From: Takakia lepidozioides
Lineage: Eukaryota; Plantae; Bryophyta
Reading direction: 5' to 3'
Assembly: GCA_030704615.1 (NCBI GenBank)
Contig: CM060734.1
Location: forward strand, 53,754,001 to 53,818,000
Length of the DNA: 64,000 nt
The notes under the pieces are model-generated. The model did not search any database. It was given only the letters and a program-made list of their open reading frames with translations, and was not told where the DNA came from. A program made the position numbers and the translations under genes. Numbering within the stretch: the first letter of the stretch is position 1; each line of letters starts with the position of its first letter. This document shows positions 19,271 through 59,238 of this stretch, piece after piece.

Positions 19271-20641
19271 TTGATTGTCCCGTAGTTAGCACATAAAGGC
19301 TATGAAGGCACATAAAGGCCCTTATATACCCTGATTAGATATATCCTTCATTTTAACATATACCCTTCAGGAAAGTAGGGTATATTGAGGGTCTTGATGC
19401 AGGTAAATATAAGGATAAGGGTATATCATAAAAATACACCCTGATATAAGGGTATATATCCGGGTACCTAAACTTGCCACACCAGGGTATATATATATCA
19501 ATATACCCTGATATACCCAGCGGGTATATCAGGGTAATTCATATGCCCGCCCAACACTGGTAATCCCCTCCACTGGGAGGCTTATACCCTACACGTATAT
19601 TACTATTCTTATGACAAATATTTTGAGAGAGAGATGCTGACTCAACCCTTGGCGATATGTTCATCCATAAGCTACAGAATTCATCCCAAATTCTCGCACC
19701 TCACCTGCAGGATCATTCATCCAGTATGCGAGGCCTTACATGCCGGCATGCTGCCACGTGGCCTCCGTGGATTCCCTGTGAGTCGAGATCAAATATAAAT
19801 ATAAGCGGGAGCGCCTCGAAGGAAGGGCAGCAGCAACTTGTCTTGGTGACCCATTCAACTTTTGGCCACTTGCTACCTAACGGTTGGTCAAACCCATTGC
19901 CCAGATTACCTTACATTTCAGTCACGTGGAAGCTCTTGAGGGTACTCTCTAACCTTTGTTCAGCAATTTCCTGCGAGCAATGTTGAAAATGTGATTATGC
20001 ACCTTAGGACCAATGTATCCGTCCATCTATCGTACATCCATTAGAAAGCGCATCCATCCACAGCTGCCTGCCTATAACAAGCGGAGTGTGAATGGAGCGC
20101 CAAGTTATCCCCGCGTCTTCATCTTCTTCCTCTCTCTTCGTCGCTGCGTGCAAGGCCGGGGACACATCAACACATCTGCGTACGATCTAGTACCTAAGAC
20201 TGCCAGTTCCAGATTCCTCAAGTGATTTTCTGTCGTATCTTAGCTGTGGTCCTCATGGACATTCTAGATCGAGAAAAATGAGAGAAGTACAGCTAATTGA
20301 ACTGCAATTCTTGGTCTTGAATGAGGTAGTAGGGAAAGCTTCAGTAAAGAGGAGTTAAGATACAGGAGTTCCATGGCACCGTGGCCCTCGCCTTGCTCCC
20401 TCTTTGTCCTGACTAGAAATGCCGACCGTTTCTTCAGCGCATGCAGTGACCGCCTTAGGACGTATTTACGTGTACGGAGATTACTGGTCAGAACGAGGTT
20501 AGATGAGCTACTTGGCTCGGTAGGGAAGTCAGGAAGCGGCGGATTCGTAGTCAATATAAAAGCCGGTGCAGCAATTTTAGGCACATTAGGTGTAGCTTTG
20601 ATAGTAACGAGTGCTGTATACATTGGAGTGTTCTGCCAAGA

Positions 20642-22703
20642 AATGTTAGAGATGCAGTGGATTGAGCTCCAAATCCGCGATCTTAGGACCAGTCACAGAA
20701 TAAGATTGAGAGGAGAAATCAGCAGTAAGGCCAGAGATGATGGTCTGGTGCCGATGCGGATTCGAGAGGGGAGACTGGGTAACGGAGACCATTTCACTTT
20801 GTTACTGTTCGCAAATATAGTCCTGATCTTTGTGAGCTGCATGGCTATCGTGGTTGTTTGGCTAGGAGAAGGGGGTTCTGCGTGGAGCGTCTCACGTATT
20901 TGCGCCAAACTAAGAATTCATACGCCAAAAGGGCCACGGGGATGGCCAGTGCTTGGTAGCTGGATGGAGATGCGAAGCAATATCCCGCACAGGAAGCTGG
21001 CAACGCTGGCTAGGCAGCACGGAACCTCTACACATAGGTTGATGTCTCTGAGTGTTGGATGCACACGCATCGTAGTGACCTCAGATCCCACCATAGCTAA
21101 GGACATTCTCCGAAGTGCAGCGTTTGCTGAGCGGCCACTAAAACAAGCAGCAATGCATCTCCATTTTTCTCGGGCAATGGGATTTGCGGTCCAAGGACCC
21201 TACTGGCTGCGCCTGCGGCAGATAGCGTCTTCTCATCTGTTCTCTCCCAAGCAAATAACTGTCCACCATGTTGCTCTCCAGCGCGAAACCTCACGCATGC
21301 TTCTGTCCGTTGCTCAAGCCTGCGACCTACATCACACACTGGCTACGGATTCTACTGTAATCGCTCGAAATGAGATTTGTCTGCGGCCATACCTGCAGCG
21401 TGCAGCTGTTAACAACATTATGAGCCTTGTTTTTGGGAGGCACTATGAATTTGATAAATCCTGTAAAGAAGCGGAGGAGTTGGAGGCCATGATTCGCGAA
21501 GGGTTTGAGGTGCTAGGTGCCTTTAACTGGGCCGACCACTTGCCTGTTTTGTGCCATCTTCAATTCCTCCCCTTCTCCATGCGCTGCACAAAGTTGATGG
21601 TGAAGGTGGAATCTTTTGTACTATCGAGAATCAATGAACATCGTTGCCGCGACCGCAGTTCAAATACTGCTAAGCCAGCTCCTGACTTTGTGGACGTGCT
21701 ACTCTCACTTGACGACGAATACAAGCTATCTGATTCAGACATGACCTCAGTACTTTGGGTAAATCTTCATTATTTTCTGTTATCTATTTATGTGTGTGTG
21801 TCGAACCTTCGTCTCTGTCTGCATTTCAATCCAACGCATGCATAGAGCATATATCCACATGTTACAAAACGAACTGAATCTATGTGACTCAATGAATAGT
21901 AGAATCATCGTAGAGAGAGCGACTCGGACCATTATGGTTGTAGCACGTAACATTTTGCAGTCTACGGTTTCGAATACTGTAGCAATATATGTCTGTACTG
22001 CCAGTGATGGTGCCAACACATTTCATGTTTAAACATCAGAAAGCTGATGCAGTGTACGTGAGACTGTAATGTCCAGGAGATGTTATTTAGGGGCACAGAC
22101 ACCATAGCTGTTCTCACAGAGTGGGCCCTTGCCGAGGTGATTTTACGTCCGGAGATACAGAAGAGGATCCAGGAAGAATTAGATGAGGTGGTGGGAATGG
22201 ACCGAATAGTGGAGGTCAAAGATATTGCACGATTGCCATACCTCCAAGCTTTTCTAACAGAAACCTTACGTTGCCATCCACCCGGACCTCTACTTTCCTG
22301 GGCACGCCTGGCGACTGAGAATGTGAAGCTGGGAGGATACGATATTCCCAAGGGCACCACCGCCATGGTCAATATGTGGGCCATCACTCATGACCCTTCT
22401 ATATGGAGGGATCCTGATGTATTCAATCCCTCTCGGTTTCTGGAGAAGGAGGGAGGTTTATATATTGACGTTAGGGGGGCAGATTTGCGCTTGGCTCCCT
22501 TTGGTTCGGGAAGGCGCGTATGTCCTGGTCGAGCTTTAGGCATAGCCACTTCAGAGCTCTGGCTAGCTCGGTTGCTCCACCACTTTTCATGGTCAGCAGC
22601 ACCTGACCATCCCGTGGATCTTACAGAAGACCTCAAGCTGTCGTGTGAAATGGCTTCTCCTTTGCACGCAACTCCCACCCGTCGACTCTGGAGTCCGATT
22701 TGA
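20642..22703 (+). CDS. CYP78A: Cytochrome P450, CYP78A (KLUH-like) family; exon 1 ends at 21758, exon 2 is 22077-22703; start codon uncertain (frame open from 20373)
   Basis: [34 protein letters not shown]|EMLFRGTDT (CYP78 I-helix with a single intron), [28 protein letters not shown] heme motif. Confidence 0.93.
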
Positions 22704-23679
22704 AGTCCAACGGGAGCCATTCGCAGGGAAAAGAGTACGTTATGGTTTCGTTGAACTGTTTCTGTGGACGTCATACCATTGTACATCATACTAGATTGCG
22801 GTCAATTGTTCGATTGTACACTAAGTACAAGTTTCCTGTTTAAAAAGAGAAGGTTCTGTTCCACACTCTTGTGGTAGTCCATGTAAAGCTCACATACTTT
22901 AATGTGTATCGAGTTATTAGAATGACTGCAGACACCTTATAGCGATCTCTGTGATAAATTGAATTCTTTAAAATACAGCTTTCACTTGTTCATTCCACTT
23001 GTTCACTCCACTTTTTCAGTTGTAGTTGTAGTTCTACTTGCTCCTTGTAGTTAGTCACCGGACCCTCTGATCAGGAGTAAATATTTGTCGTTTCAAAAAC
23101 GGTCAACCTGCCAAACCGACAACAAGGAAGGTTTCACTACTTCTAGACTGACAGTAACATTCAGTTTACCCCACCTCCAACTGGATCATGTGATCAACTT
23201 CATCAATAATCGTGAGTTCAAAGCTCCATCGCTGGTATGTTCTGCTTAAATTTGGAATCAAGAAAGATAAGCAAGTATGTTTGTGACGTGCACAATATCT
23301 GAATCACAGCATTTCTTACCTACACATTTTGTTGTTGGTTTCACAGGCTGTTCATAGTGAAGTTTGAAAGTGAGCACAATAAACTTTCATGTATTGAATG
23401 AATGAATGAATGCCTTCAAGGTCGAACTATTCGAACAACAATTACTGGTTGGAAAGTCCACAAGGACTGGGGAAGAAGCCGTGCTAGTGCTAGTTGCAAT
23501 GCTGACTTTTGCCAGTATAGCAAGCCTCAATGGAAGAGCATAATGCTGAGATTAGTGGTTCATTACCACCGTATCCTGGTGGTGTAAGGAAGGGCAGCTT
23601 GCTAAAACATAGAGTGATATTGACTATCAGCTCATGCGGTCCTGAGGAGGTAGCCTCTTTGTTTGATCCCCAAGTTTTT

Positions 23680-24361
23680 TCAGATGCCAAAAAGCATACC
23701 GGGTCTAGTTTCAAATGTTGTGTCTCGGGTGAGAAATCCCAGTGCTTGCTCATAAACTCCCTCTTCTTTGTTGGGGAAGTGTGCAGTGCGGCTGCTAATG
23801 ACTTGCAACAGTTTTGTCTGTGGCTCCAGCAGCATTGTGATGGCCTTGGACACAAGACTGGCATTTGTGACTGCTGGTGGAGGAGGCCTCATTATGTCTC
23901 GCAGACGTGCACTCATCTGCACCAATCACAACCATGAGAGAACACCCTAGATACACCCTCAGCTGTTGTAGTGGTAAAGCAGTCCCTCTGAAGGTAATGA
24001 ATGTGGGGGCGTGGGGGGGAGCGAGAGAGAATGTACTCATAAGATGTTGTTTGCCGTAGCCTTGTGGGCACAGACCCTGCGCCCAGTTTGGGCGGAACAA
24101 AGGGGACCAGAAACTACCTTTGTGAGGGGCTCACTCCGGTAGTCTGGCTTACCTTGGTATAGAAAATTAGTTCGGCTTTCCAGATATCCTCTAGGTAGCC
24201 CTTCAAGCAAGCATCAATCTGCTGTGTGTGAGCAGCCCAAAAGTTAGACCCAACAAGCCAGGGCTTTGGGCTCAGCCTCAAGATTTTGAGAGTTGGTGAA
24301 CAGAGGTGCCGGGACAATGTTCTTGATTGTCCTGAAGAGGGTCACTCTCTGGTGTGCGCGC

Positions 24362-24399
<38 letters not shown>

Positions 24400-25664
24400 A
24401 TGGTTAGTGGTGTGGTCATACCAGGGCTACTACAGATCCCATGAGAACTCTAAAGTTAAGCATTTTTTGCCCGGAATAGTACTGGGATGGTGACCTCCGG
24501 GGAAGTCCCGCTGCTGCACCCCCACTACTGTATCAGAACTTTTGTTCCACTCAAACTGGGCGCGGGGTCAATGGCCACAAGGCTACGGCAAAACGTCTTA
24601 TGAGAGAGAGAGAGAGAGAGATTGTACTCATAAGACGTTGTTTGCCGTAGCCTTGTGGCCATTGACCCCGCACCCAGTTTGAGCGGGAACAAAAGGGACA
24701 GAACCTACCTCTGTCAGGGGCTGACGTTGGTAGTAAGACTTACCTCCATATATAGAATTAATCCGGGTTTTCCAGATATCCTCTAGAAATCCCTTCACAC
24801 AAGCATCAATCTGCTGTGTGTGATTTGCCCAAAAACTAGGCCTCAGGAGGGCCTGGGCTTTTGGCTCAGCTTCGAGACTTTCAAAGTTGGTAAACAGGGG
24901 TACAGGCACAATACCCTTAATAGATTTGAAGAGAGCGTCTCTTTGGTGAGAGAACCCCGGACAGTGTATCAGAAAATGAATACTGTCTTCAGATTGCCCA
25001 CACAACGGGCAATTGCACTCTCCCTTTCCTCTCTGCTTCTGTTTGCTGTTCAAAGGTAGGCTTCCTGCCCTGAGTTTAAATTTCAGTCTAGTGCCGAGAG
25101 TGGGTAGACCCTTGGGGTCATCCAAGATGTCCTCCCCCATGTCACAGACTGGAAACAAGTTCAGGGAAGTTTTCTGCCTAACTTCATTTTCATCAGACAA
25201 TCTCATGGCAACACACATGGCTGAGGACACTACAGCCTCTAAGTCAGATTTATCCAGCAGGGTCAAGACTTGCGGATCCAGGTCCAGGTCCTTGAGGATC
25301 TCTTCTACTCTCTTCTGCCAGGACTTAGCCTGTTTGACAGGGCGGTCCTGTTTCCAAGATATAGAGTTGATTAACTTAGGATATCTGGTGTTGGGCATAT
25401 GTTGCAGCTGACCCCACCATCTGACCTTGAATTCATCTCGTCGGGAGCTTAAGGACGGAATGCCAAACTCACCCTGAACAGCCACATTGGCTGTTTTGGA
25501 GCATGCTGACATACACTCCTTAAGCACCCCCACTTGAATGGATTCTAGAGACTTAGCCTGGTTGGAGTTATCAACCCATATAGCAGATCCGTACTCCAAG
25601 GCAGGTCTAATAACGCGACAAAGCATGGTTTTCTTAACCTCAGAGTTGACCCCTCTGCAGTGGA

Positions 25665-25707
<43 letters not shown>

Positions 25708-28700
25708 CTCATAAGACGTTGTTTGCCGTAGCCTTGTGGCCATTGAGAGAGAGAGAGAGAGAAAGAGAGAGCGAACCTCTCTGCAGTCTTCAGCATAAAC
25801 AATGCCGATGCAACAACCTCGCTCGTCCACGATTGGCACCACATCTTCTCTAAAGAAACGTAGAGCGACTGAACGTAACACAGCATCCCCTAACACTGGC
25901 CTTGCTTGGGCATAAGGCACCATTATGTTTTCAACTTGCTCAAATGGTGATACCTGAACATGAGACACAAATACCATTAGAGATGGAAAGAGAAACAGTT
26001 TTTTTGTGAGTACGTACTGATAAGACGACGTGTGCCACAGCCTTGTGGTGTATGAGAGAATGTACTAATGAGACGTTGTTGCCATAGCCATTGTGCTCAT
26101 AGGACTTACCTTGGTATATACAATTTGGTTCAGGCTTTCCAGATTTCCTCTAGAAAGCCCATCTCAATCTACGCTGCCCAGCAATTAGCCCCCAACAGGG
26201 CCAGAGCTTTAGGCTCAGCCTCGAGAATTTGAAAGTTGGTGAACAGAGGTGCATGGACTATATTCTTCATGGTCCTGAAGGATCTCTCTCTGATGAGAAG
26301 AGCCTGGATATTGTATCAGAAAATGGATATTGTCTTCAGGCCGCCCGCACATTGGGTATTGACAATCTCCCTTTCCTCTCTGCATCGGTTTATTGTTCAC
26401 AAGTGGACTCCCAGCCCTTTTGGATTTCGGTAAAGTGCCGAGGGTAGGTAGGCCCTTTAGATCATCCTTAAGGTCCTCACCCGTGTCACAAACTGGAAAC
26501 AAGTTCAGGGAAGACTTTCTCCTAACTTTGTTTTGTTGACACATTCTCCCTGCTTCCGACATGGCCGTAGACACTTCAGCCTTCAAGTCAGCGTCATCTA
26601 GGAGGGCCAATTCTTCCTGCCTAATATTCCAATCTCCTCTATCTTTTTCGTCGATCACCTTTGGGTATCTTGTATTAGGCATGCGATTCAACTGACTCCA
26701 CCATCTGAGCTTGAACTCATCATGAGAGCTTAAGGGTGGTACGCCAAACTCGCCCCAAAGAGCTGTGTTAGCTGTTCTAGAACAAGCTCACATGCTCTCT
26801 TTGAGCACCGAAAGCTGATCGGACATTTAGCATGGTTGGAATTGCCATCCCACACGGTAGATGCGTACTCCAAGGTAGGCCTAATGACGTTGCAAAGCAT
26901 GGTCCTTTCAACTTCAGTATAATCTCTCTGCAGTGGAAAATTTAGTGAGACCCAAAGCTGTGTGTTTGGCTGTTGGAACAACTTTCTGTACATGTGCATC
27001 CCAGTTACAACTGGAGGAAAACTCAACGCCAAGATATGTGTAGGAAGGGAGCACAGGGATCTCTTCACTTCCACATGCCCATTTGAGATCCCCTCCTCCC
27101 TCCCCATGATCATTGAGGGCCACCAATGCATTTAATAGCATTGGCTTCAAAGTACCTCTTTGCACAATCAGTCAACTTCTGAAGATTGGGGTATGCCCTA
27201 AGCCCACGAATTCACCCGCAAACATAAGAGCTGGTATGGTGGCATCACCCACCCAAATCCCTCGCTTTCCACATCTTCAGGGAGCTGATTAGTGAAGACA
27301 TTGAAGAGCAGTGGGCAGATGGCACAACCTTGAGCTACACCTTGGTCAATGTCAAATAAGTTCGACTTCTGGCCATTGACCATAACACAACTTTTGGTGT
27401 TCACATACAGGTTGTGAACCATCCTCCATATCTTCCCCTGACCCCAGAAGGCCACAGACAAAGCCACAGCCCGTCCATGCCATAAGGCTCTTTACATTCA
27501 GAAAGTTGACAAAGGTGGGTTTTCCGTCTTTTTTCTTTCCCTGAATAGTCTGGCTTAGGATAATCATATGGTTGACGCAGCCCCGCCTAAACTTCATGGA
27601 AAACACTTCTAGACTCCAAATCAACCTGAAGATGGGTGCTTATTATCCTACCAAACAGCTTGCCAGCTGCACTAAGAAGGGTAATGCCATGGTAGGTCCC
27701 AGGCTCTTCTGTCGCCTTTCTTACACAGATTGACAATGACACCCTCCCTCCAGCAGAAGGGTCTTCTTTTAAGGTTCGTGAGGAGGTCTACCATAGGATC
27801 GCCACCATGATTGTTGTGCTATCACACCCACCGGCTTTATAGCCCTTTAGATATTCAATGAATTCTCAGAAGAACAAATGGGAGTGTTTATTCCTTTGGG
27901 ATATACTCTCCAGTTCATCAGAGCTATCTTAGATCGCCCTTTCATTCTTTAGAAAACCACTCACCGCTAGAGTTAGATTTACGGCCAAGAAGGCTGTAAT
28001 GCGTTTCAAAGGTCTTCATAATCTCAACCATACAAGTCACCATTGCACCCTCGTTATTCCTCAAAGCATGTACTTGCTGACCATTTCTCAGCCTGTACAA
28101 AAGCTGGGAGGCCAATCAGAGTCTTTTCTCATTACCACCGTGGTGGCTCAAATTAATGTTAGGATACAACTCTTCCCAATATATTTCTTCTGAGCCTTTA
28201 GTAGCTGATTTTCCTATTTTTGCAGCTGGTAATATCTAGATCACAGCTCTCTGTCATCTTTGATACTGCAGCAGTCCCTATAAAGCTCCCGTCTCTCGAC
28301 AATGTTAAGCTTCATCTCATTGGTCCACAAATCCACTGCTCTTCCACATACAATAAGTTTCCTTCCAATGATTTTTTAAGCCACAGAAGTAGAGCCACAG
28401 GAGGAGGGAGAGAGAGATTGTAACATCCAAAGCATTTCCCAAGAAGATGTACTTGTGTACAATTTCTTGGCAGCCTTGTGATAAGAATGTACTCATGAGA
28501 CGTTGTTTGCCATAGCCTAGCCTTGGGGGAAGAGAAGGGGAGAGAGAAAGGGAGATACGTACCCCTCTCCGAAGTATGTAAGGTGAGAAGATATCCTCAC
28601 AGAAACCTGTCAAAGCCTGCAAACGTACGACAGCCTGCCACACACAATAACCCTCATAAGCACCTTCGGCCACCATTGAAACTTTTCCAAAATATTTCCC

Positions 28701-31700: not shown

Positions 31701-34700
31701 ACTGAGGAATATTCTTTTAAAGCACGCAGCCCTGTGTCCTTTCTGTCTTTTTCATCTGGCACCTTAATTGTGCTTGAAGTGCGCCAATAAACAGATGGAA
31801 TGTCTAGGACTCCGCCAGCTCCAGCCTAAAACTACCGCGACCTCACAAACCTACAGCATGTTCTCCAATTTCCTGTCTGCAAAGGCTATTACGCCCTTCT
31901 CAAATGTTGCACCAAACCATTCCCCAGCCTTTCCCCCCCTAACGAGAGCACACATGAATATGCAAGGAGAAAGGGCCTATCAACCTTCATGTCTGCCAAG
32001 AGCCGGAGACCTCGAGACATGTCTCCTCCACGCACACAGGCCAACATGAGGGAATTGAATGTCAGGCGCTGCGGATGCAGGCCATGTGACCGCATCTCGT
32101 CTATTAGTTTAAACGCCTCCAGCGGATTGTCCGACCGTGCATACCCCTGTCAACAGCACAGCAGTCGTTCAAGAGGCAGAGCCTCATTAGGTGCACCTAA
32201 GACTGCTTCCTGTACCCTTCTGGCCATTGATCTGTGGCAGTTTGCATAGAGCAGAGAGAGAGTGAAAATGTACTCATAAACACATTTGTAGCCTCATGGC
32301 CGTAGACCACGCCCCCAGTTTGGGTGGAACAGAGGGAACAGATAGTACCTTTGTGAGGGGCTCACTCCAGTAGCGGGACTTACCTTGATATAATCAATTA
32401 GTTTGGGCTTTCCAGATATTCCCTAGAAAGCCCTTCACACAATCATCCATCTGCTGTGTGCCCAGCAGTTACACCCCAACACGCCTGTACTTGAGGGAGT
32501 ATTAATGGAATAGACGAAATTTTTAGGCTCAACCTCAAGATTTTGCAAGTCGGTGAACAGAGGTGCACAGACTACGTCCTTAATGGTCCTGAAGAGGGTC
32601 GCTCTCTGATGAGAATACCCCTGTCCATCAGAAAGTCGATATTGTCTTCAGGCCGCCCGCGCATCGGGCATTGAGAATCTTCCTTTCCTCTCTACACCTG
32701 TTTATTGGTCAAAGGTAGAGTCCCAGCCCCGAGTTTAAGTCTAGTGCTCAGGGTAGGTCGGCCCTTCAGGTCATGAAAGAGAGAGAGAGAATTTACATTT
32801 GCTGTAGCCTTGTGGCCATAGACCCTGCCCTCAGTTTGAGCGGAACAAGAGGGAACAGACACTACCTTTGTGAGGGGCTCACTCCAGTAGCGGGACTTGG
32901 TAGAAACAATTGGTTTGGCCTTTCCAGATTTCCTCTAGAAATCCCTTCACACAAGCATCAATCTGCTGTGTATGAGCTGCCCAGTAATGAGACCCCAACA
33001 GGGCTAGGGCTTTAGGCTCAGCCTCAAGATTTTAGAAGTTGGTGAACAGAGATGCAGGGACTATTGTTCTTGAGAGAGACAGTCGAGTGCTGTTGATATG
33101 ATGGGAATAAGAGGAGACCTTTATAAGAAGATTGTAAGTGAAGGTGGTGACCCCGGTTCGGTTAAGTGGGGTGCGGTAACGAAGCAGCACACCCCGTGCG
33201 CGCCGAGCATCCCCTGCACCCCATCACTGCCAACTGAGGATATTGGACCAGCTGCTAACCAGAGAGACAGGCATGTACATACATAAACAGTTTTCTCAGC
33301 CCTCATGGCTGATGTGAAACATGAGGAAGGCAAAGAGAACCTCACCAGAATCAGCACAAGCATTCACTAGACTGTTGAGATGCACATCAGTTAACTGAGG
33401 TCGGCCAGGGGCAGTGCCGGCCTCCATTGATTCCAGCACCTCAAATGCATCGTCTAGTCTCCTTGCAGAGCCCAAGCCCTGCTACACATTCATCACCGCT
33501 GTCATTGCATATATAGGCTCTGGAAATGCCTAGAATTGAGGACGAAGCCCTCCCTGGACAGGTGATTAACTCCTCATCTTCATCTCAACGTCACTCATTT
33601 GTTCATCTTTGAGAAACAGATTAGTAACGGGCCATTGGAGCAATCTTCATGTGATGTTAGTTCATCAAATTTGTCTTGATGCACAAAACAGGCCTATTTC
33701 TCTACGATTACTGTTTCCATCAAAAGCTTACCCTCAAAAGAGTTCCATATGTGACATTATCAACACTGCAGCCTCCAGGCTGCACCATTTCATCAAAAAC
33801 ACGCAGGGCACGATTGATATCTTCGCAATGCACGCATGCTGCCATGACAGCATTCATAATGATGCGATTCAGCTTCTGATGCTTTTTCTTTGCACACTCC
33901 ACCTCCTCAAAGACCTGGTTCCATGCAAGTCCCATTCTGACCCACATTACAATCTCGTGTATCTAAAATTTATGAAAGAAGGATTGGCAAGTTACCGCAC
34001 TTAGCCAACTCAACAACACATTAGCTTTGCCTCCCATTTCTCGTGTTCTTCAAGTGAGAGTACCTCAATCATTCCACAGAACCTCCAAGAAGAATATTCC
34101 CACTTGTAAACATCTTGCCTGCCTATCCTGCCTGTATAAGTCTGGCATATGAACTCAGCCCACCAAGGTCTGCAGGACTCAATCTGATATCGCCAGTGTT
34201 TGCTCACAGCCATATCAAGAAACAGTGGATTGAGCTTGGGTTACGTGCCGGCAGGAACATATTAGTATAAAGCATGCAGTTGATTTGAGCACTGCTGCTG
34301 TGGCAGAAGATCTGACAAAATGGCTTTGATTTCACTCCTGTTAAGGACAAGAATGGCATGGTAGAAAATAAAGCAAACAAGCAAAGCTTTCCTGAGGGGT
34401 GATATCCAAGTGCGTGAACTTAAGCCTCAAAAAAGAAGATAGGAACATAAACGAATACTGTGTGCATTATATCTACTGTTAGGTGTTGTGCCCAAAAGTC
34501 TAGTATGAGGCAATCGGAAGGTTTTTCTGCTGCTCCACTTTGTCTAGTGTTCATGTACTTTCCTGGCTACTGTGGTCAAATTCCTATCACCACTTTGTTG
34601 CTGGCTGGTCAAGTTGGTATTGACCTAGTGGCTTTCCCTGCTTGTGAGAGTTTTACCACAGCAGCCTTCTCTTGCTTCGCGGAAAAGGTGAAGGTCTTGT

Positions 34701-41300: not shown

Positions 41301-44150
41301 GGTGATGAATTCAACCTGTGTGGGTTGACAATTCCAATCATGCTAAATCTCTATAATCCATTCAGGTCGTGGTGCTCAAAGAAAGCATGTCGGCTCGTTC
41401 TAGAACAGCTAATGTGGCTGTTCGGGGGGAGTTTGTCATACCTCCCTTAAGCTCTCGACGTGATGGGTTCAAGGTCAGATGGTGGGGTCAGTTGAATATC
41501 TGATGCCCAAAGACTGTTCGATGCAAATGAAGTTGGGCATAAAACTTCCCTGAACTTGTTTCCAGTCTGTGACATGGGCAAGGACCTTAATGATGATCTC
41601 AAGGGCCTACCTACCCCTGGCACAAGACTGAATTTTAACGTGAAGGCGGGAAGCCTAACGTTGAATAATAAACAGATGTAGAGAGGAAGAGGAGATCGTA
41701 ATTGCCCGATGTTCGGGCAGCCTGAAGACAAAATCCATTTTCTGATTCATTGTCCGGGATATTCTGACCAGAGAGTGACCCTCTTCAGGACAATCAAGAA
41801 CATTGTCCCTGCACGTATGTTCACGAACTTTGAAAACTCAAGGCTGAACCTAAAGCCCTGGCCTTTGGGGTCTAATTGCTGGTCAGCTCACACACCGCAA
41901 GTTGATGCTTGCGTGAAGGGCTTCCTAGAGCATATCTGGAAAACCCGAACTAATTGTCTCTATCAAGGTAAGTCACACTACCGGAGTGAGCCCCTCACGA
42001 AGGTAGTATTTGTTCCATTTGTTCCGCCCAAACTGGGCACTGGGTCTATGGCCACAAGGTTACACAGTAAACAACGGGTTATGAGTACATTCTCTCCCCC
42101 TGCCCACTAGGTAGCCTACTCAATGGCTGAACTTGACATGGGAGTAGGTAAACGTCCCTGTGACTAAATGCCGGCCTTGTGAGCCCTTGTTTGATTGACC
42201 TGAAGCAGTTTGCTTCAGGTAAGGCAGTGCATTGGATTTAGTTGAGAGAAGGGATCTCTCCTTTTGTAGAATATGCCTAAACAGGCCATTCCCTGCAGCT
42301 CCTATGGACTGATTGATCGTGAATGGTAACAAGCAGATCCATATTGGGGGCAGCCCTTTCCTCAAAGTGGGCAGTCTGGCTTGCATGCTCAACAGGCTAT
42401 TGTGTCTAAATCTCTTACCTTCTATCAATACATCTCTTTTTCCAGATAATGCACGGATTCCCCGGGGTGATATCTGGGAGCTGGTTACTTCTGCCAAATC
42501 TAGCATTTGTGTAGATTTACCCCACATCATGTCCTAGAAAGCTACTCTCTGATTACTCTCATCAGATAGTGACCCTCTTCGGGACCATCAAGAACTTAAT
42601 CCCTGCATCTCTGTTCACCAACTTTCAATTCTCGAGGCTGAGCCCTGTTGGGGTCTAATTGCTGGGCAGCTCACACACAGCAGATCGATGCTTGTGTGAA
42701 GGGCTTTCTAGAGGAAATCTGGGAAGGCAGCACCAGTTATCTATACCAAGGCAAGTCCCACTACTGGGGTGAGCCGCTCACAAAGGGAGTGTCTGTTCCC
42801 TCTAGTTCCGACCTAATTGGGCGGGGGGTTAAGGCTATTAGAAGCAATGTCCCATGAGTGCATTCTCTCCTTCTCTCGCCACCTTCCCCCACCCTCCTTT
42901 CTTCTTTTGTAGTAGGCCATTAAATGTGTGGACAACAGCGGTGTACTTGCAAGTTTCCTGACAAACAGCTATTGATCATGCAGTCCGTGTCCCTATTGTC
43001 ACGAGGGTTCCAGAAATGTAAGCAGGGTTTTTATATTTATCTTGGGGTTGAGGGGAAGCAGATCAGGTCCACATAACATGTGTGGCGTACTCACAGCAAG
43101 AAGAGCTCCTGGTGTCTTACAATGACGAACTCATCTATCTGTTTGACGATGAGATGGGCTTGGGTCCAAACCCCAAAGAAAGGCAATCGACAGAAGACAC
43201 GGGAAATAGTGATGTTGTGGGTCCCCAGCCAAGGTGTCCAGAACCAGAAGTGTACAAAGGACATCGAAATGCCCAAACTGTGAAGGGTGTCAACTTTTTC
43301 GGTCCCAATACTGAGTATGTGGTCAGTGGGTCAGACTGTGGACGAATATTCATATGGAAGAAAAGGGGTGCCAAGTTGTTGCTAGCTTGAGGCATGGGGA
43401 CAGCCAAGTAGTGAACTGCTTGGAGCCCCACCCATATTCCACCATTCTTGCAACCAGTGGGATTGATAGAACTGTCAAAATCTGGGCTCCAACAGCGAAT
43501 GAGCTCCTGCCACTTCCTAGCGATGCTGAGAAGGTGAGTGTGGTACCTTGTCATCTCTGTTGCCCTTGTGCTTGTGAGCAGTAGGCCTTGTGATTTGTAC
43601 CTCCACACATGTAGCTCTCCCTTCCTCTGCCATGCTGGCACCATGTTTTTCAGGCATTCTCCATCCAGTGGACTGTTTTTGGATAGATTGCTGAATCATC
43701 AACTGTTGTTCATGGGCTGTCTTTGTTAACCCTGTGGTGTGTTCTTGTTAACTTATTACAAGTAAATATATTTTAGTATCCAAAATGGCTGAGTTGTTTT
43801 GCGTCCATGTTGCATCCTTGTCATGCCATCAGATTTGGGAAAAGTGAGTCTATAAGTGAGACAAAAAGCTTGACGCTTGATCTGAGTGACTGTCGGGTTG
43901 TTTGTAGGTCATGGAATTGAACAGCTGGGAAAGAGAAAATCGGTCTCACATCTCCTTGACGCCAGATTCTCTAATGAATGTGTTGCGTTTGCAACGGCGG
44001 CATGCTCAGCGTGATCATGATCGTGGACACTCGCAAACGTTGATGGATGAGGATGTAGATGATGACGACGATGACGACTACATGGACTTTGAGGAGTTAT
44101 CATCCGATGAGGGGGGTACTGTGAACCCACGTGAGTGCATTATCGGTTGA
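38307..44150 (+). CDS. DCAF8-like WD40 (DDB1-CUL4-associated factor) gene; exons 38307-38414, 39058-39309, 39654-39797, ~40238-40493, 43062-43533, 43909-44150; apparent frameshift at ~43380
   Basis: [40 protein letters not shown]...[11 protein letters not shown]...[15 protein letters not shown]...[10 protein letters not shown]...[14 protein letters not shown]...[35 protein letters not shown]...[22 protein letters not shown]. Confidence 0.88.
40980..42100 (+). mobile_element. RTE-X-like LINE (internally deleted) in the WD40 intron
   Basis: [28 protein letters not shown]; 3' end ...ttatgagtacattctctc. Confidence 0.85.
42555..42875 (+). mobile_element. RTE-X-like LINE 3' fragment
   Basis: [20 protein letters not shown]; ends catgagtgcattctctc. 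Confidence 0.8.
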
Positions 44151-56438: not shown

Positions 56439-56532
56439 GACTGCCATAGTAACAGGCAGTCCGCGCTGAGCGGGTGAGGGTGCAAACCCTCTCCGCGATT
56501 ATGCACAACGGTGGGTTTTTATACTCACATTG
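56439..56532 (+). ncRNA. Putative Fanzor omegaRNA scaffold / element right end
   Basis: Three stem-loops directly after the stop: GACTGCC/GGCAGTC (56439-56461), GCGG..GAGGGT-GCAA-ACCCTC..CCGC (56470-56496), GTGGGT/ACTCAC (56511-56528). GC content drops after this. Confidence 0.6.
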
Positions 56533-56561
56533 AATGTACGATGGAGGCCCTTGAAATGAAC

Positions 56562-56655
56562 GTTGTTTACAGTGGAAGGAAACTGGTGCATTTTGTTGAA
56601 AAATGTATCTTACCAAAAGAGTCATGTTGTTTCCAGTGGAAGGAAACTGGTGCAT
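56562..56655. repeat. 30-bp direct repeat x2 with a 34-bp spacer
   Basis: gttgttt(a/c)cagtggaaggaaactggtgcat at 56562-56591 and 56626-56655. Confidence 0.9.
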
Positions 56656-56906
56656 CTTTCAAAATCTCGAGGCTGAGCCCAAAGCCATGGCCCAGTTGGG
56701 ATCTAATTGCTAGGCAGACCACAAGCAGATGCTCATGTCAAGGGCTTCTAGAGGAAGTATGGAATCTCGAACAAGATTGTCAGTGTCACGGTAAGCCCCA
56801 CTACTGGAGTAGGCCCCTCACAAAGGTAGTGTCTGTTCCCTTTTGTTGTGCCCAAGCTGCACAGAGTCTATGGCCACAAGGCTACGGTAAAGAACATCTT
56901 ATGAGT
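56656..56906 (+). mobile_element. RTE-X-like LINE 3' fragment abutting the p44 pseudogene end
   Basis: ctcgaggctgagccc...ggccacaaggctacggtaaagaacatcttatgagta. Confidence 0.8.
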
Positions 56907-59238
56907 AAGGTTGAGATCTTGATGTAGAGATACTTTCACAACCAGGACAGTTATGGAGGCTCTCATGAATGTAAAGGTCACATTCAAAGCAGAAGTGCTG
57001 CCTGCAGCTTGGACACATGAGCCGCACCCTGCTTACCCTGCCCCCTGTCATACAAACAAAACAGCAGATTGATGAGCATCCTGTGCAGAAAAAAATGATA
57101 AATGCCAGAGAGAGACAACTTGTGAAAGAGGTACCTGTGAAAGGGAGTTCCTGCTGGCAGCCATAACAGAGAAGGGCTATGCTTTGCTTCCCATTTGCCT
57201 CCGCCAAATTACCAAACTCCTCAAATGGGGGCACTGGAAAAAGATGGTGATAAGAGCGTGCCAAGTGGGGAGATGAAACCAATGTCAGCCCACATAGGTG
57301 ACACTCAGTGGGAAGGTCACATACACGAGCTTTGCAATGAGGGCAGGTGTAACCTCCCCTATCGTCACTTCTCTGTGCAAGCACAGAGTGCCACTGCATC
57401 TTCTGCACCCCTTTGTGGAAAGCCCATTCGTACTAGGCTCGCTATAGGTGTCTCTGCCAGTGCATGCTCCATTATCAGGTGGGGCATGCTCCATTATAAG
57501 GTCTTTCACGTGGGCCTGTATGAGAGCACATGTTGTGCTTAGTGTATGTGACCAAGAGAAGTGGGCGAAGTAAGAGCTATGAGCTCCCCAAGAAATCAAA
57601 GGCTCCAAGTAATGAATGTATCAACTGCACTGGACTCCATTGCACAGAATTCAACAATGAGAACTACAAGGGAACACTGAAGTAAGATTTGAGGAGGTAT
57701 TAGTTCCACCATACAATGGAGGTCAGATTCTACTTGGACAAGGGTCTGCAATACCAATGATGCACTCAAAACTTGCCAATGAAGTAAAAATGCTGATACT
57801 GTAGCCCACATTCTTTCTTACATGGTGATGAGAAAGAGAGGCTAGCACCCACAAACCTCGCTTGTTGCAACGGAATAAATCCCGCTCGTTCATTCACATA
57901 AAAGTTTACAAATGTAAACTTCAGCAGCCAGCCTACAACAGAACATCGGATATTAGCCTCCTTGCACTTCTGGATTGCCTCCATGAGGTCTCCAGGGTCA
58001 CAGGTGCCAAGTGCTGAAAAGATGAGCACCATCTCCCGGTGCCCATATGTGGGTATTTGAGACAAAAACCCTCTGGCCAAGTCAAGTGCATTCTGTATCG
58101 AAACATCCCCTGTGCGCGGGCCTCCTATTTTGACCTCGATATGTGTGTGAAAGGTACAAGTCACATCCACAGGAAGCCTGAACGGCCAATAGGAGCAGAG
58201 AGGAAGAGATCATAGAGCAGAGGAACTTTTGGAGACGGAAGAGAACTTACAGGACTTGTAAGTGGGTGGAGTTGACAGATGGCATTGGTCCATATAACTG
58301 GTTGTCAAAGAGAATCCTGTTCCATACAAAATAGGCACAAAATATAGGTCAAAAAGGAATAAAAATCAAATCTTCTGGAATTACAACAATCTTTCCTTCT
58401 TTTTTATTTTTGTGAGAAAATGGGGAAACGCCCCAGAATCAACATTGTCGCTCGAGACCATCGATTGCAATCAACTCGCGCTCAAAGGCCTCAACACAGT
58501 TGGCCACGATTCCCATGCGGCTGGGCCGAAAGTCCGTCTCCGCAGCCGCCTGGGCAGGCATCCCACGGTCCCCAGTTTAGAATGAGGCCTTCATCTTTGC
58601 ATACCAATTCTAGGGCTGGGGTTTAAGGACCCTCTTTTGTAGCTAAATGCTACTATCAAATGTACAGGAATCTTACTGGGAATGAAAGCATATCTAAGGT
58701 CACCGAGAATATTAGAAGAGAGGGGCCAACAAGCCCTTGCGGTGTCCTTTCACCGAACATAGGCTTGCGTACTCGAACCAAGGGGAATCCAAGCAGGGTA
58801 GGGGCTTTTCTCAACGCATAATGTGAGAGCGCCCATCCTCTGCCACCTACGACTCTCGCGGTCATAATGGTGCCTCGAGTAGATTGGATGCGGGGTAATC
58901 TGAACAACACACTCTCTTTTCTGGCTAAATACAAAGAAAAACTTGAAGTGAAGTTTGCGGGATCAACTCACTCGGGAGAGATCGACGAGAAGGTAGAGGT
59001 AACGGATAATGCCGCGCTGGATGTGAGGGCCAGCCATGGCTGCAACCTTCTTTCGATGCTGGCGCTGCTGCTGTACAACATCCACAGGTCGCAACAATCC
59101 AGACTCATCCTCTTGAAGAACCTCCCAAGACCGATCGTCCGCGTACGCTCGCTCCCAAGCCTCCATGTCCCGCCCGGCTTCCTCAGCGTCCACATCTCCA
59201 TCATCTTCCACACCGTATGCCACATTTTTCTCCCCCAT
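56899..59238 (-). pseudogene. GTF2H2: TFIIH p44/SSL1 subunit, intron-containing pseudogene
   Basis: AWERAYADDRSWEVLQEDESGLL...IQRGIIRYLYLLVDLSR; GDVSIQNALDLA..IPTYGHRE; GYTCPHCKARVCDLPTEC..CGLTLVSSPHLARSYHHLFP; FCFECDLYIHESLHNCPGC. Frameshifts at ~57930, ~57470 and ~57360-57385; the central vWA exons are not seen. Confidence 0.85.

What the first reader, a model, noticed from the sequence alone, without database searches (positions are those of the whole stretch)
24409..24604. 5S rRNA head fused to the LINE 3' tail: candidate plant SINE3 (5S-derived SINE)
Seen in sequence: a full-length degenerate 5S sequence with its internal Pol III promoter, then a ~17-nt linker, then ~65 nt nearly identical to the 3' terminus of the adjacent RTE-X-like LINE, all within (GA)n. 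Established knowledge: Pol III head plus partner-LINE tail is the classic SINE design; 5S-headed SINE3s are described chiefly from animals, and plant 5S-bearing TEs are mainly Cassandra TRIMs. Inference: either a new SINE3 family mobilised by this LINE, or a one-off template-switch chimera like U6-L1.
Basis: partly seen in the sequence, partly recalled or inferred. Interest (0 to 1): 0.8.

Follow-up and report, generated by a model that had tools for sequence, protein, structure and literature searches.

The report
5S rRNA fused to LINE tail
A decayed copy of plant 5S ribosomal RNA is joined to the last ~65 bases of a very abundant jumping gene (LINE); this is the layout of a 5S-derived SINE, a kind not reported in plants, but DNA data from the same organism show only about 1-3 look-alikes, so it is most likely a one-off by-product of the LINE's reverse transcriptase, not a multiplying family.

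Summary
Rfam finds a full-length but decayed 5S rRNA at 24408-24522 (+). A 16-nt linker follows, then 65 nt that are 93% identical to the sense 3' end of a LINE, and (GA)n lies on both sides. The neighbouring LINE is on the opposite strand, tail to tail, so the two LINE ends form a 68-bp hairpin.

The SINE-family reading is not supported. In contigs of a DNA run of the same organism, at 80% likeness or more, the 5S head and linker have the depth of about 1-3 single-copy contigs. The LINE-derived parts reach 3e5 to 1.8e6. The copy also has a T6 run inside the head and a T4 run exactly at the linker/tail joint, both RNA polymerase III stop signals. It lacks the LINE's last 6 nt and its (CT)n tail.

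Best reading (0.6): one retrotransposition event in which the LINE reverse transcriptase copied about 65 nt of LINE RNA and then switched to a 5S-type RNA, as in mammalian U6/L1 and 5S/L1 chimeras.

The scan has flagged the same kind of fusion at ten or more other places in this genome, with lengths of 156-448 nt. I could not see those loci. If their junctions really differ, they are recurrent chimeras, not one family. A low-copy plant SINE3 family is not excluded (about 0.15).

The parts
24362..24399 (.). (GT)7(GA)12 microsatellite on the 5' side; probable target site and left half of a microsatellite target-site duplication
   Evidence: coordinates; sequence
24400..24407 (+). 8 nt (ATGGTTAG) of unknown origin between (GA)n and the 5S start; extra 5'-junction nucleotides, or a relic of a LINE terminus ((GA)nAATG is how LINE ends begin on this strand)
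   Evidence: inference
24408..24523 (+). Full-length, decayed 5S rRNA head (box A-like AAGTTAAGC at 24453-24461, box C-like at 24478-24495)
   Evidence: Rfam RF00001, 57.8 bits, model 1-120; motif coordinates
24463..24468 (+). T6 run inside the head: an RNA polymerase III terminator signal that would stop transcription of this copy
   Evidence: role from established knowledge of Pol III termination
24524..24539 (+). 16-nt linker ACTACTGTATCAGAAC. Either the 3' trailer of a read-through 5S-type transcript, or a LINE piece: CCCCACTACTG is identical to a LINE motif about 115 nt from the LINE end
   Evidence: origin inferred
24540..24604 (+). LINE-derived tail: sense copy of LINE positions -71 to -7, beginning at the LINE's TTTT (24540-24543) and ending at CTTATGAG; lacks TACAAT(CT)n
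   Evidence: blastn 92.8% to LINE B; I1/I2; alignment A1; LINE contigs diverge before 24539-24543 (table 7)
24602..24621 (.). (GA)10 shared between the chimera's 3' end and the (CT)n tail of LINE B on the other strand; right half of the possible microsatellite target-site duplication
24621..25660 (-). LINE copy B, 5'-truncated (1040 nt), same subfamily as the chimera's tail; ends ...CTTATGAGTACAAT(CT)n
   Evidence: ORF with LINE C-terminal region
24032..24354 (-). LINE copy A, a 5'-truncated 323-nt 3' end of an older subfamily (79% to B)
25702..25746 (-). 45-nt LINE 3'-end fragment, 100% identical to B, with (CT)n on both sides: shows that very short LINE copies are laid down in this microsatellite

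Best explanation
This is a single chimeric retrocopy made by the reverse transcriptase of a very abundant, recently active LINE whose copies end in ...TATGAGTACA(A/T)T(CT)n and sit in (GA)n/(CT)n microsatellites.

Inferred steps:
1. A free (CT)n 3' end on the minus strand of the microsatellite primed on a LINE RNA at the internal GAG of ...CUUAUGAG, 6 nt before the RNA's terminus.
2. The enzyme copied about 65 nt, as far as the LINE's only UUUU run.
3. It then switched template to a 5S-type RNA and copied that to its 5' end. The acceptor was either a polymerase III transcript ending ...CAGAAC-UUUU, or the CCCC 3' end of 5S reached by way of a LINE motif.
4. The cDNA was joined to the left flank with 8 extra nucleotides.

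The LINE template could have been a free LINE RNA or the end of neighbouring copy B itself (fold-back). Both give the same sequence.

Shown here: the three parts, their order and orientation, the microsatellite on both sides, and the lack of a multi-copy family. This copy is not a working SINE. Polymerase III would stop at the T6 run in the head or at the T4 run before the tail, there is no upstream promoter-like sequence, and the LINE's terminal 6 nt and tail repeat are missing.
For: Whole 5S in sense orientation, 5' of a 5'-truncated LINE 3' end. The whole unit is bracketed by (GA)n, with no microsatellite between head and tail. Summed contig depth over the head and linker is 51-168 in run X1, where long unique contigs have depth 57-60, against 3e5-1.8e6 over the LINE parts. 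The junction sequence is unique in the window. LINE homology starts exactly at TTTT 24540-24543 (table 7, 26, 45). The tail carries the letters of the young B subfamily (B and the 45-nt fragment are 100% identical; 2554 of 10659 laid contigs are at least 99% alike), so a young member of an active family should have close siblings, and none are seen. The 45-nt fragment shows that early termination in this microsatellite happens. The mechanism is documented for L1 in mammals, including 5S/L1 (10.1101/2025.02.02.635956), and for the MGL LINE in a fungus (PMC2104539). Unchecked scan notes list ten or more further 5S-LINE fusions in this genome, of 156-448 nt with tails of 53 to about 300 nt.
Against: A 16-nt linker lies between the 5S end and the tail, whereas U6/L1-type chimeras usually join directly at the small RNA's 3' end. 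The target-site duplication cannot be proven because both flanks are (GA)n. One or two extra single-copy contigs match 24431 to about 24530 at 80% or more. They could be siblings or the source gene, and I could not see them. The head looks somewhat more decayed than the tail (about 8 broken pairs and three deletions, against 1 substitution and 2 indels in 66 nt), which would fit a template that was already a diverged 5S-like RNA. Several of the other fusions noted by the scan have similar lengths (196-226 nt), which could mean a shared junction. Contig data drop rare variants, and some records are filtered.
Confidence: 0.6

Rival explanations
1. It is a member, internally deleted and 3'-truncated, of a true low-copy or older 5S-derived SINE (SINE3) family. 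In that family a polymerase III transcript of a master copy is mobilised by this LINE through the shared 3' end.
For: It has the canonical SINE build: a polymerase III-type head plus the partner LINE's 3' end. Boxes A and C are recognisable. One or two further contigs match the head, up to about 24530. The junction CCCCACTACTG equals a LINE motif about 115 nt from the LINE end, so a fixed junction of 5S plus the last ~108 nt of the LINE is conceivable. The scan notes several fusions of 196-226 nt in this genome (unchecked). The head may have been diverged already when it was copied.
Against: There are at most about 3 contigs at 80% or more over the head and about 1-2 over the 5S/linker joint, against 1e5-1e6 for the LINE. 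The tail is young, so siblings should be close, yet none appear. The T4 run between head and tail and the T6 run in the head would end polymerase III transcripts before the tail. The copy lacks the LINE's last 6 nt and (CT)n and lies in the opposite orientation to the microsatellite compared with all ten LINE copies in the window. The noted fusions range from 156 to 448 nt, with tails of 53 to about 300 nt. A 2024 review knows of no 5S-derived SINE in plants (PMC10946416).
Confidence: 0.17
2. There were two separate events, or a rearrangement at the DNA level. A lone 5S retropseudogene or orphan 5S unit was already at the site, and either a short LINE 3' fragment landed beside it or a fold-back inverted duplication of LINE B's end formed there.
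For: Short LINE 3' fragments do insert on their own in this microsatellite (the 45-nt piece at 25702-25746). The tail and LINE B's end form a near-perfect 68-bp palindrome centred on the (GA)n (dG -120.7 kcal/mol, z -18), with only 1 substitution and 2 small indels. The linker has no proven origin.
Against: There is no microsatellite or duplication between the linker and the tail, although independent LINE fragments here carry (CT)n on both sides. Head and tail are collinear and in the same sense, within 16 nt of each other. Only one 5S match exists in the 64 kb, so a chance meeting with a LINE terminus in this exact arrangement is unlikely. The same arrangement is noted at ten or more other loci (unchecked). 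It is not a 5S rDNA array unit or a Cassandra LTR: there is no second 5S, no terminator directly after the gene, and no LTR features.
Confidence: 0.15

Closest known systems
U6/L1 and 5S rRNA/L1 chimeric retrocopies of mammals (template switching during LINE-1 reverse transcription; 10.1101/2025.02.02.635956 and the work it cites; PMC4476161)
   Same: A whole small polymerase III RNA lies 5' of a 5'-truncated LINE 3' end in one insertion. Each chimera is an individual product that does not multiply. Such chimeras recur in one genome.
   Different: The host is a plant, and the LINE is not L1-like with a poly(A) tail: it ends in a (CT)n microsatellite. Human 5S/L1 chimeras are mostly antisense and truncated, whereas this one is sense and full-length, like U6/L1. 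It has a 16-nt linker, was primed 6 nt inside the LINE end, and has a microsatellite instead of a readable target-site duplication.
MINE and other bipartite or tripartite chimeric retroelements of Magnaporthe grisea (WEIRD RNA fused to the MGL LINE; PMC2104539)
   Same: A LINE outside the mammals switches template at preferred sites of its own RNA and fuses a non-coding RNA copy to its 3' end. The junction here lies at the LINE's only UUUU run, which would fit a preferred switch site.
   Different: The 5' partner there is a 1.1-kb RNA of unknown function, not 5S. Those elements have clear 12-14-bp direct repeats. The organism is a fungus.
SINE3: 5S rRNA-derived SINEs of animals (zebrafish SINE3, fruit-bat MEG, lepidopteran HaSE3, coelacanth CoeSINE5; PMC5786205, PMC10946416, PMC3272025)
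   Same: A 5S head with internal-promoter boxes, followed by a short spacer and the 3' end of a co-resident LINE.
   Different: Those are families of many copies with one fixed structure, which is the criterion stated in PMC5786205. This sequence has about 1-3 look-alikes, polymerase III stop signals before the tail, and an incomplete LINE terminus. None is known from plants (PMC10946416).
Cassandra TRIMs (plant LTR retrotransposons with a 5S sequence in each LTR; PMC10886601, PMC10946416)
   Same: A 5S-derived sequence inside a plant mobile element.
   Different: Cassandra has two LTRs, each with a 5S copy, plus a primer-binding site and a polypurine tract. Here there is one 5S in the 64 kb, joined to a LINE end, with no LTR structure.

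Membership tests
SINE3 (5S rRNA-derived SINE) | Head derived from 5S rRNA with internal polymerase III promoter boxes | tested here: met
   Rfam 5S, 57.8 bits, full model length. Box A-like and box C-like motifs are present. The intermediate-element region is decayed into T6.
SINE3 (5S rRNA-derived SINE) | 3' part shared with a co-resident partner LINE | tested here: met
   65 nt at 92.8% to LINE B's 3' end. It lacks the last 6 nt and the (CT)n tail that all LINE copies carry.
SINE3 (5S rRNA-derived SINE) | Many dispersed copies with the same head/body/tail structure (a retrotransposition unit, PMC5786205) | tested here: not met
   At 80% likeness or more, depth is 51-168 over the head and linker, with single-copy depth about 57-60, against 3e5-1.8e6 over the LINE parts. 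There is no second copy in the window. The test used contigs, not the full assembly, so a low-copy or more diverged family is not excluded.
SINE3 (5S rRNA-derived SINE) | Transcribed as one unit by polymerase III, with no terminator before the tail | tested here: not met
   T6 at 24463-24468 and T4 at 24540-24543 lie before the tail. This is a sequence prediction for this copy only. No RNA run is on record as holding the region, and two runs guessed to be RNA have contigs only over 24431-24493.
SINE3 (5S rRNA-derived SINE) | Target-site duplication around the whole element | tested here: inconclusive
   (GA)12 on the left and (GA)10 on the right. This fits an insertion into a microsatellite but is not a readable duplication.
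LINE template-switch chimeric retrocopy (U6/L1 type) | Full-length small RNA copy 5' of a 5'-truncated LINE 3' end, in the same orientation | tested here: met
LINE template-switch chimeric retrocopy (U6/L1 type) | Each chimera is an individual product: junction unique, not amplified | tested here: met
   About 1-2 contigs across the 5S/linker joint. Unique in the window. No ORF look-alike of the junction peptide (a weak test).
LINE template-switch chimeric retrocopy (U6/L1 type) | Junction directly at the 3' end of the small RNA | tested here: inconclusive
   A 16-nt linker intervenes. It ends at the TTTT shared with the LINE, which fits the U-tail of a read-through polymerase III transcript. 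Alternatively CCCCACTACTG is a LINE motif (z 1.8-2.6). Neither is proven.
LINE template-switch chimeric retrocopy (U6/L1 type) | One target-site duplication around both parts (a single integration) | tested here: inconclusive
   (GA)n lies on both sides of the whole unit and none lies between the parts.
Cassandra TRIM | Two LTRs, each with a 5S-like sequence, plus a primer-binding site and a polypurine tract | tested here: not met
   There is only one 5S match in the 64 kb, and no direct repeat containing it.

The most novel reading that the evidence does not exclude
The copy belongs to a genuine, low-copy 5S-derived SINE family of a moss-like land plant, the first plant SINE3. Its head would be joined to the LINE at a fixed point, the LINE motif GTCCCACTACTGG that resembles the 3' end of 5S, and this copy would be an internally deleted, aberrantly primed member. 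A weaker form of the same idea: this LINE repeatedly fuses 5S RNA to its own tail, so the genome shows the birth stage of a SINE.
Probability: 0.15. Interest if true: 0.75.

Novelty: new member of a known kind. Interest (0 to 1): 0.45.

Why it matters
No 5S-derived SINE is known from plants (PMC10946416, 2024). In the papers I could search, LINE template-switch chimeras with small RNAs are described from mammals and one fungus, not from plants. This locus is a clear plant example of a LINE reverse transcriptase joining a whole 5S RNA to its own 3' end, which is the step thought to give birth to SINEs (PMC5786205). On its own it is a dead, probably single-copy product. Its value lies in the set: the scan has noted ten or more such fusions in this one genome. 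Aligning them would show whether a plant LINE makes recurrent chimeras at preferred switch sites or has already founded a small SINE3 family.

Tried and rejected
1. Metagenome scan. I scanned JGI metagenome contigs with a pattern running from the 5S 3' block, across a gap, to the LINE-tail block. It gave 25 loci; none resembles the element or the LINE by blastn, so they are chance matches.

2. Junction peptide. I used the stop-free 47-aa translation across the junction (24460-24600) to look for ORFs called on sibling copies. There was no candidate. The first try, at 38 aa, was under the size limit. A blank here says little.

3. Does the LINE 3' UTR carry a 5S-like structure? Rfam with permissive E-values on LINE ends found none. 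It found only generic miRNA-hairpin matches caused by the inverted repeat.

4. LINE clade. The LINE C-terminal ORF has one relative in 5.8 billion proteins (P0001, 51% identity). Its contigs (L026, L027) hold no 5S. The Atlas gives only unnamed eukaryotic clusters. The clade is not settled and 'RTE-X' is not confirmed.

5. Organism. A paper search for a run accession found nothing. The organism is known only as a Streptophyta-type plant; earlier agents called it moss-like.

6. Other readings rejected. Cassandra solo LTR, 5S rDNA unit and 5S-mimic exon are rejected: one 5S only, no LTR, no gene context. There is no tRNA-headed SINE either, as the window has no tRNA.

7. Tail structure. The tail's fold is no better than shuffled sequence (z -1.1), so I claim no 3' stem-loop.

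8. Twin priming during LINE B's own integration is rejected on geometry. It would put the inverted piece at the LINE's 5' end, not beyond its tail.

9. Operators' notes.

Full report
**What is there.** Rfam's 5S rRNA model matches 24408-24522 on the + strand over its full length (positions 1-120), at 57.8 bits against a gathering score of 38 and E 1.7e-09 for the whole window. It is the only Rfam family that reaches its gathering score in the 64 kb. The copy is decayed. It has about eight broken pairs and a 3-nt and two 1-nt deletions against the model, and a T6 run at 24463-24468. Box A-like (AAGTTAAGC, 24453-24461) and box C-like (24478-24495) motifs are still recognisable.

After the 5S end (…GCTGCACCCCC, to 24523) come 16 nt, ACTACTGTATCAGAAC (24524-24539). 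This stretch is unique in the window even with three mismatches. Then 24539/24540-24604 aligns to positions 966-1034 of the 1040-nt LINE copy B at 92.8% (I1; alignment A1). On the left lie (GT)7(GA)12 (24362-24399) and 8 nt, ATGGTTAG. On the right lies (GA)10 (24602-24621).

First, the neighbouring LINE (B, 24621-25660) lies on the minus strand, so the chimera and LINE B are tail to tail across the (GA)10. Together they fold into a near-perfect hairpin of about 68 bp (dG -120.7 kcal/mol, z -18). Second, all ten LINE copies in the window end …TATGAGTACA(A/T)T followed by (CT)n in their own sense. The chimera stops at …CTTATGAG and runs straight into (AG)n. It therefore lacks the last 6 nt and the LINE's own tail repeat, and it lies in the opposite orientation to the microsatellite compared with every LINE copy.

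**The LINE.** Copies A (24032-24354), B, a 45-nt fragment (25702-25746, 100% identical to B, with (CT)n on both sides), and D to J are listed. Contigs of a DNA run of the same organism (X1, which holds 84% of the sampled words of 22000-25000) pile up on the LINE parts to summed depths of 3e5-1.8e6. Of 10659 laid pieces, 2554 are at least 99% alike. The LINE is therefore very abundant and recently active.

Its clade is open. Pfam sees only a weak RVT_1 match. The C-terminal ORF has a single relative among 5.8 billion proteins. The Atlas gives unnamed eukaryotic clusters. I could not confirm 'RTE-X-like'.

The genome is a plant's. A two-exon P450 gene lies at 20373-22703, and its nearest clusters are from Streptophyta.

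Read laying on 24200-24800 at 80% likeness or more gives summed contig depths for run X1 over the head and linker, bin by bin from 24410 to 24535, of 51, 108, 120, 168, 114 and 93. Long unique contigs in the same run have depth 57-60 (records 1 and 4). So only about one to three single-copy contigs lie on the head, and one to two cross the 5S/linker joint.

The tail carries the letters of the young B subfamily. A young copy of an active SINE should have close siblings, and they are not there.

LINE contigs diverge from the stretch just before 24539-24543. Their loose-end consensus is …GGTAGTTTCTGT(C/T)CC…, the LINE's own upstream sequence (table 7). This fixes the start of the LINE-derived part.

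There are caveats. These are contigs, not reads. Some records are filtered out. The one or two extra contigs over 24431 to about 24530 could be siblings or the source gene, and I could not see them.

A relative's run (X9) has only a 36-nt 5S-like piece. Two runs guessed to be RNA cover only 24431-24493. Nothing can be said about expression.

**Features of this copy that speak against a working SINE.**
- A T6 run lies inside the head, and a T4 run lies exactly between linker and tail. Both are polymerase III stop signals (established knowledge), and both come before the part that the LINE would have to recognise.
- Upstream there is only microsatellite.
- The LINE terminus is incomplete.

**Mechanism (inferred).** On the minus strand the sequence reads …GAGTACAAT(CT)n|CATAAGACG…. 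This is what results if a (CT)n 3' end primes on the GAG of …CUUAUGAG of a LINE template. The enzyme copied about 65 nt, up to the LINE's UUUU. At that point the cDNA ended in AAAA, which can pair with the U-tail that polymerase III transcripts carry. The sequence that follows is a 16-nt trailer and then a whole 5S. The simplest acceptor is therefore a read-through 5S-type transcript ending …CAGAAC-UUUU.

An alternative comes from the alignment. The joint CCCCACTACTG is identical to the LINE consensus motif (GGTAAGT)CCCACTACTGG about 115 nt from the LINE end. That motif also resembles the 5S 3' part, GGGAAGTCCCGCTGCTG, at 15 of 17 positions (z 1.8-3.6, marginal). The switch may therefore have used CCC microhomology with the mature 5S end, with a later or simultaneous internal deletion.

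The LINE template may have been a free RNA, or the end of copy B itself by fold-back. The product is the same either way.

Twin priming within B's own integration is excluded on geometry.

The 45-nt fragment at 25702-25746 shows that this enzyme often stops very early in this microsatellite.

**Comparison with what is known.** Template-switch chimeras of a small RNA with a LINE 3' end are documented for L1 in mammals. U6 makes up 71% and 5S 10.5% of 253 human cases, and they do not go on to propagate themselves (10.1101/2025.02.02.635956). They are also documented for the MGL LINE in Magnaporthe, where switching occurs at preferred sites (PMC2104539).

5S-derived SINEs are known from fish, reptiles, mammals and insects. 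[quoted passage not shown]

The accepted criterion separating a SINE from a chimeric copy is a high copy number of nearly identical structure (PMC5786205). That criterion was tested here and not met.

My paper searches found no report that links SINE3 with bryophytes and no description of plant LINE/small-RNA chimeras.

**Earlier notes of this scan.** These are unchecked and I could not see the loci. Ten or more other 5S-LINE fusions are noted in this same genome, with finding lengths of 156-448 nt. Follow-up agents reported tails of 53 nt, about 77 nt and about 300 nt, and none could test for a family.

If the tails really differ, that is the signature of recurrent independent chimeras. The cluster of lengths around 196-226 nt keeps a small family possible.

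My contribution beyond those notes:
- the copy-number test;
- the orientation and terminus anomaly;
- the TTTT joint;
- the LINE motif at the junction.

**Dead ends.**
- The metagenome pattern scan gave only chance hits.
- The junction-peptide search found no candidate.
- Rfam on LINE ends and on two Logan contigs found nothing.
- No tRNA heads are present in the window.
- The tail's fold is not better than chance.

**Verdict.** The most likely reading is a single template-switch chimeric retrocopy (0.6). It has the architecture of a SINE3 but is not shown to be one. A member of a low-copy plant SINE3 family stands at about 0.17, and separate events or a DNA-level fold-back at about 0.15. Interest is moderate: the copy itself is an ordinary dead product, but the set of such fusions in this genome deserves a whole-assembly analysis.

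Noticed in passing
window 24536-24698: The chimera's tail and the 3' end of LINE B form a near-perfect hairpin of about 68 bp with a (GA)n loop (dG -120.7 kcal/mol, z -18). Rfam's permissive scan reports it as weak miRNA-precursor look-alikes (MIR2600 at 45.7 bits, below gathering). If transcribed, it would be a ready source of small RNAs against the LINE's 3' end.
   Followed up: partly
window 25660-25780: A 45-nt LINE 3'-end fragment (25702-25746), 100% identical to LINE B, sits between two (GA)n runs and directly upstream of LINE B's truncated 5' end. LINE copies stack head to tail in (GA)n/(CT)n, which suggests the LINE targets this microsatellite or its own tails, as microsatellite-specific LINEs of animals do (from my own knowledge, not tested).
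   Followed up: partly
window 24100-24160, 32330-32400, 42740-42790 (LINE copies, about 105-125 nt from their 3' ends): The LINE 3' region carries the motif GGTAAGTCCC(G/A)CTACTGG, which matches the 3' part of the 5S copy (GGGAAGTCCCGCTGCTG) at 15 of 17 positions. It could be chance, an old capture of 5S sequence, or a homology that favours 5S-LINE switching.
   Followed up: partly
window 24628-25977 (-) and P0001: The LINE's C-terminal ORF has only one relative (51% identity, a Logan contig) among 5.8 billion clustered proteins, and no Pfam family. This abundant LINE lineage is almost absent from protein databases.
   Followed up: partly
window 20373-22703 (+): A two-exon cytochrome P450 gene (Pfam p450, E 1.4e-57 for the second exon) with Streptophyta-type relatives lies 1.7 kb upstream of the LINE nest. 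It looks intact.
   Followed up: no
window 56653-56907 (+): Another LINE 3' end (copy J) lies about 90 nt after the Fanzor-tail hairpins that the scan noted at 56439-56560. It ends without the (CT)n tail.
   Followed up: no
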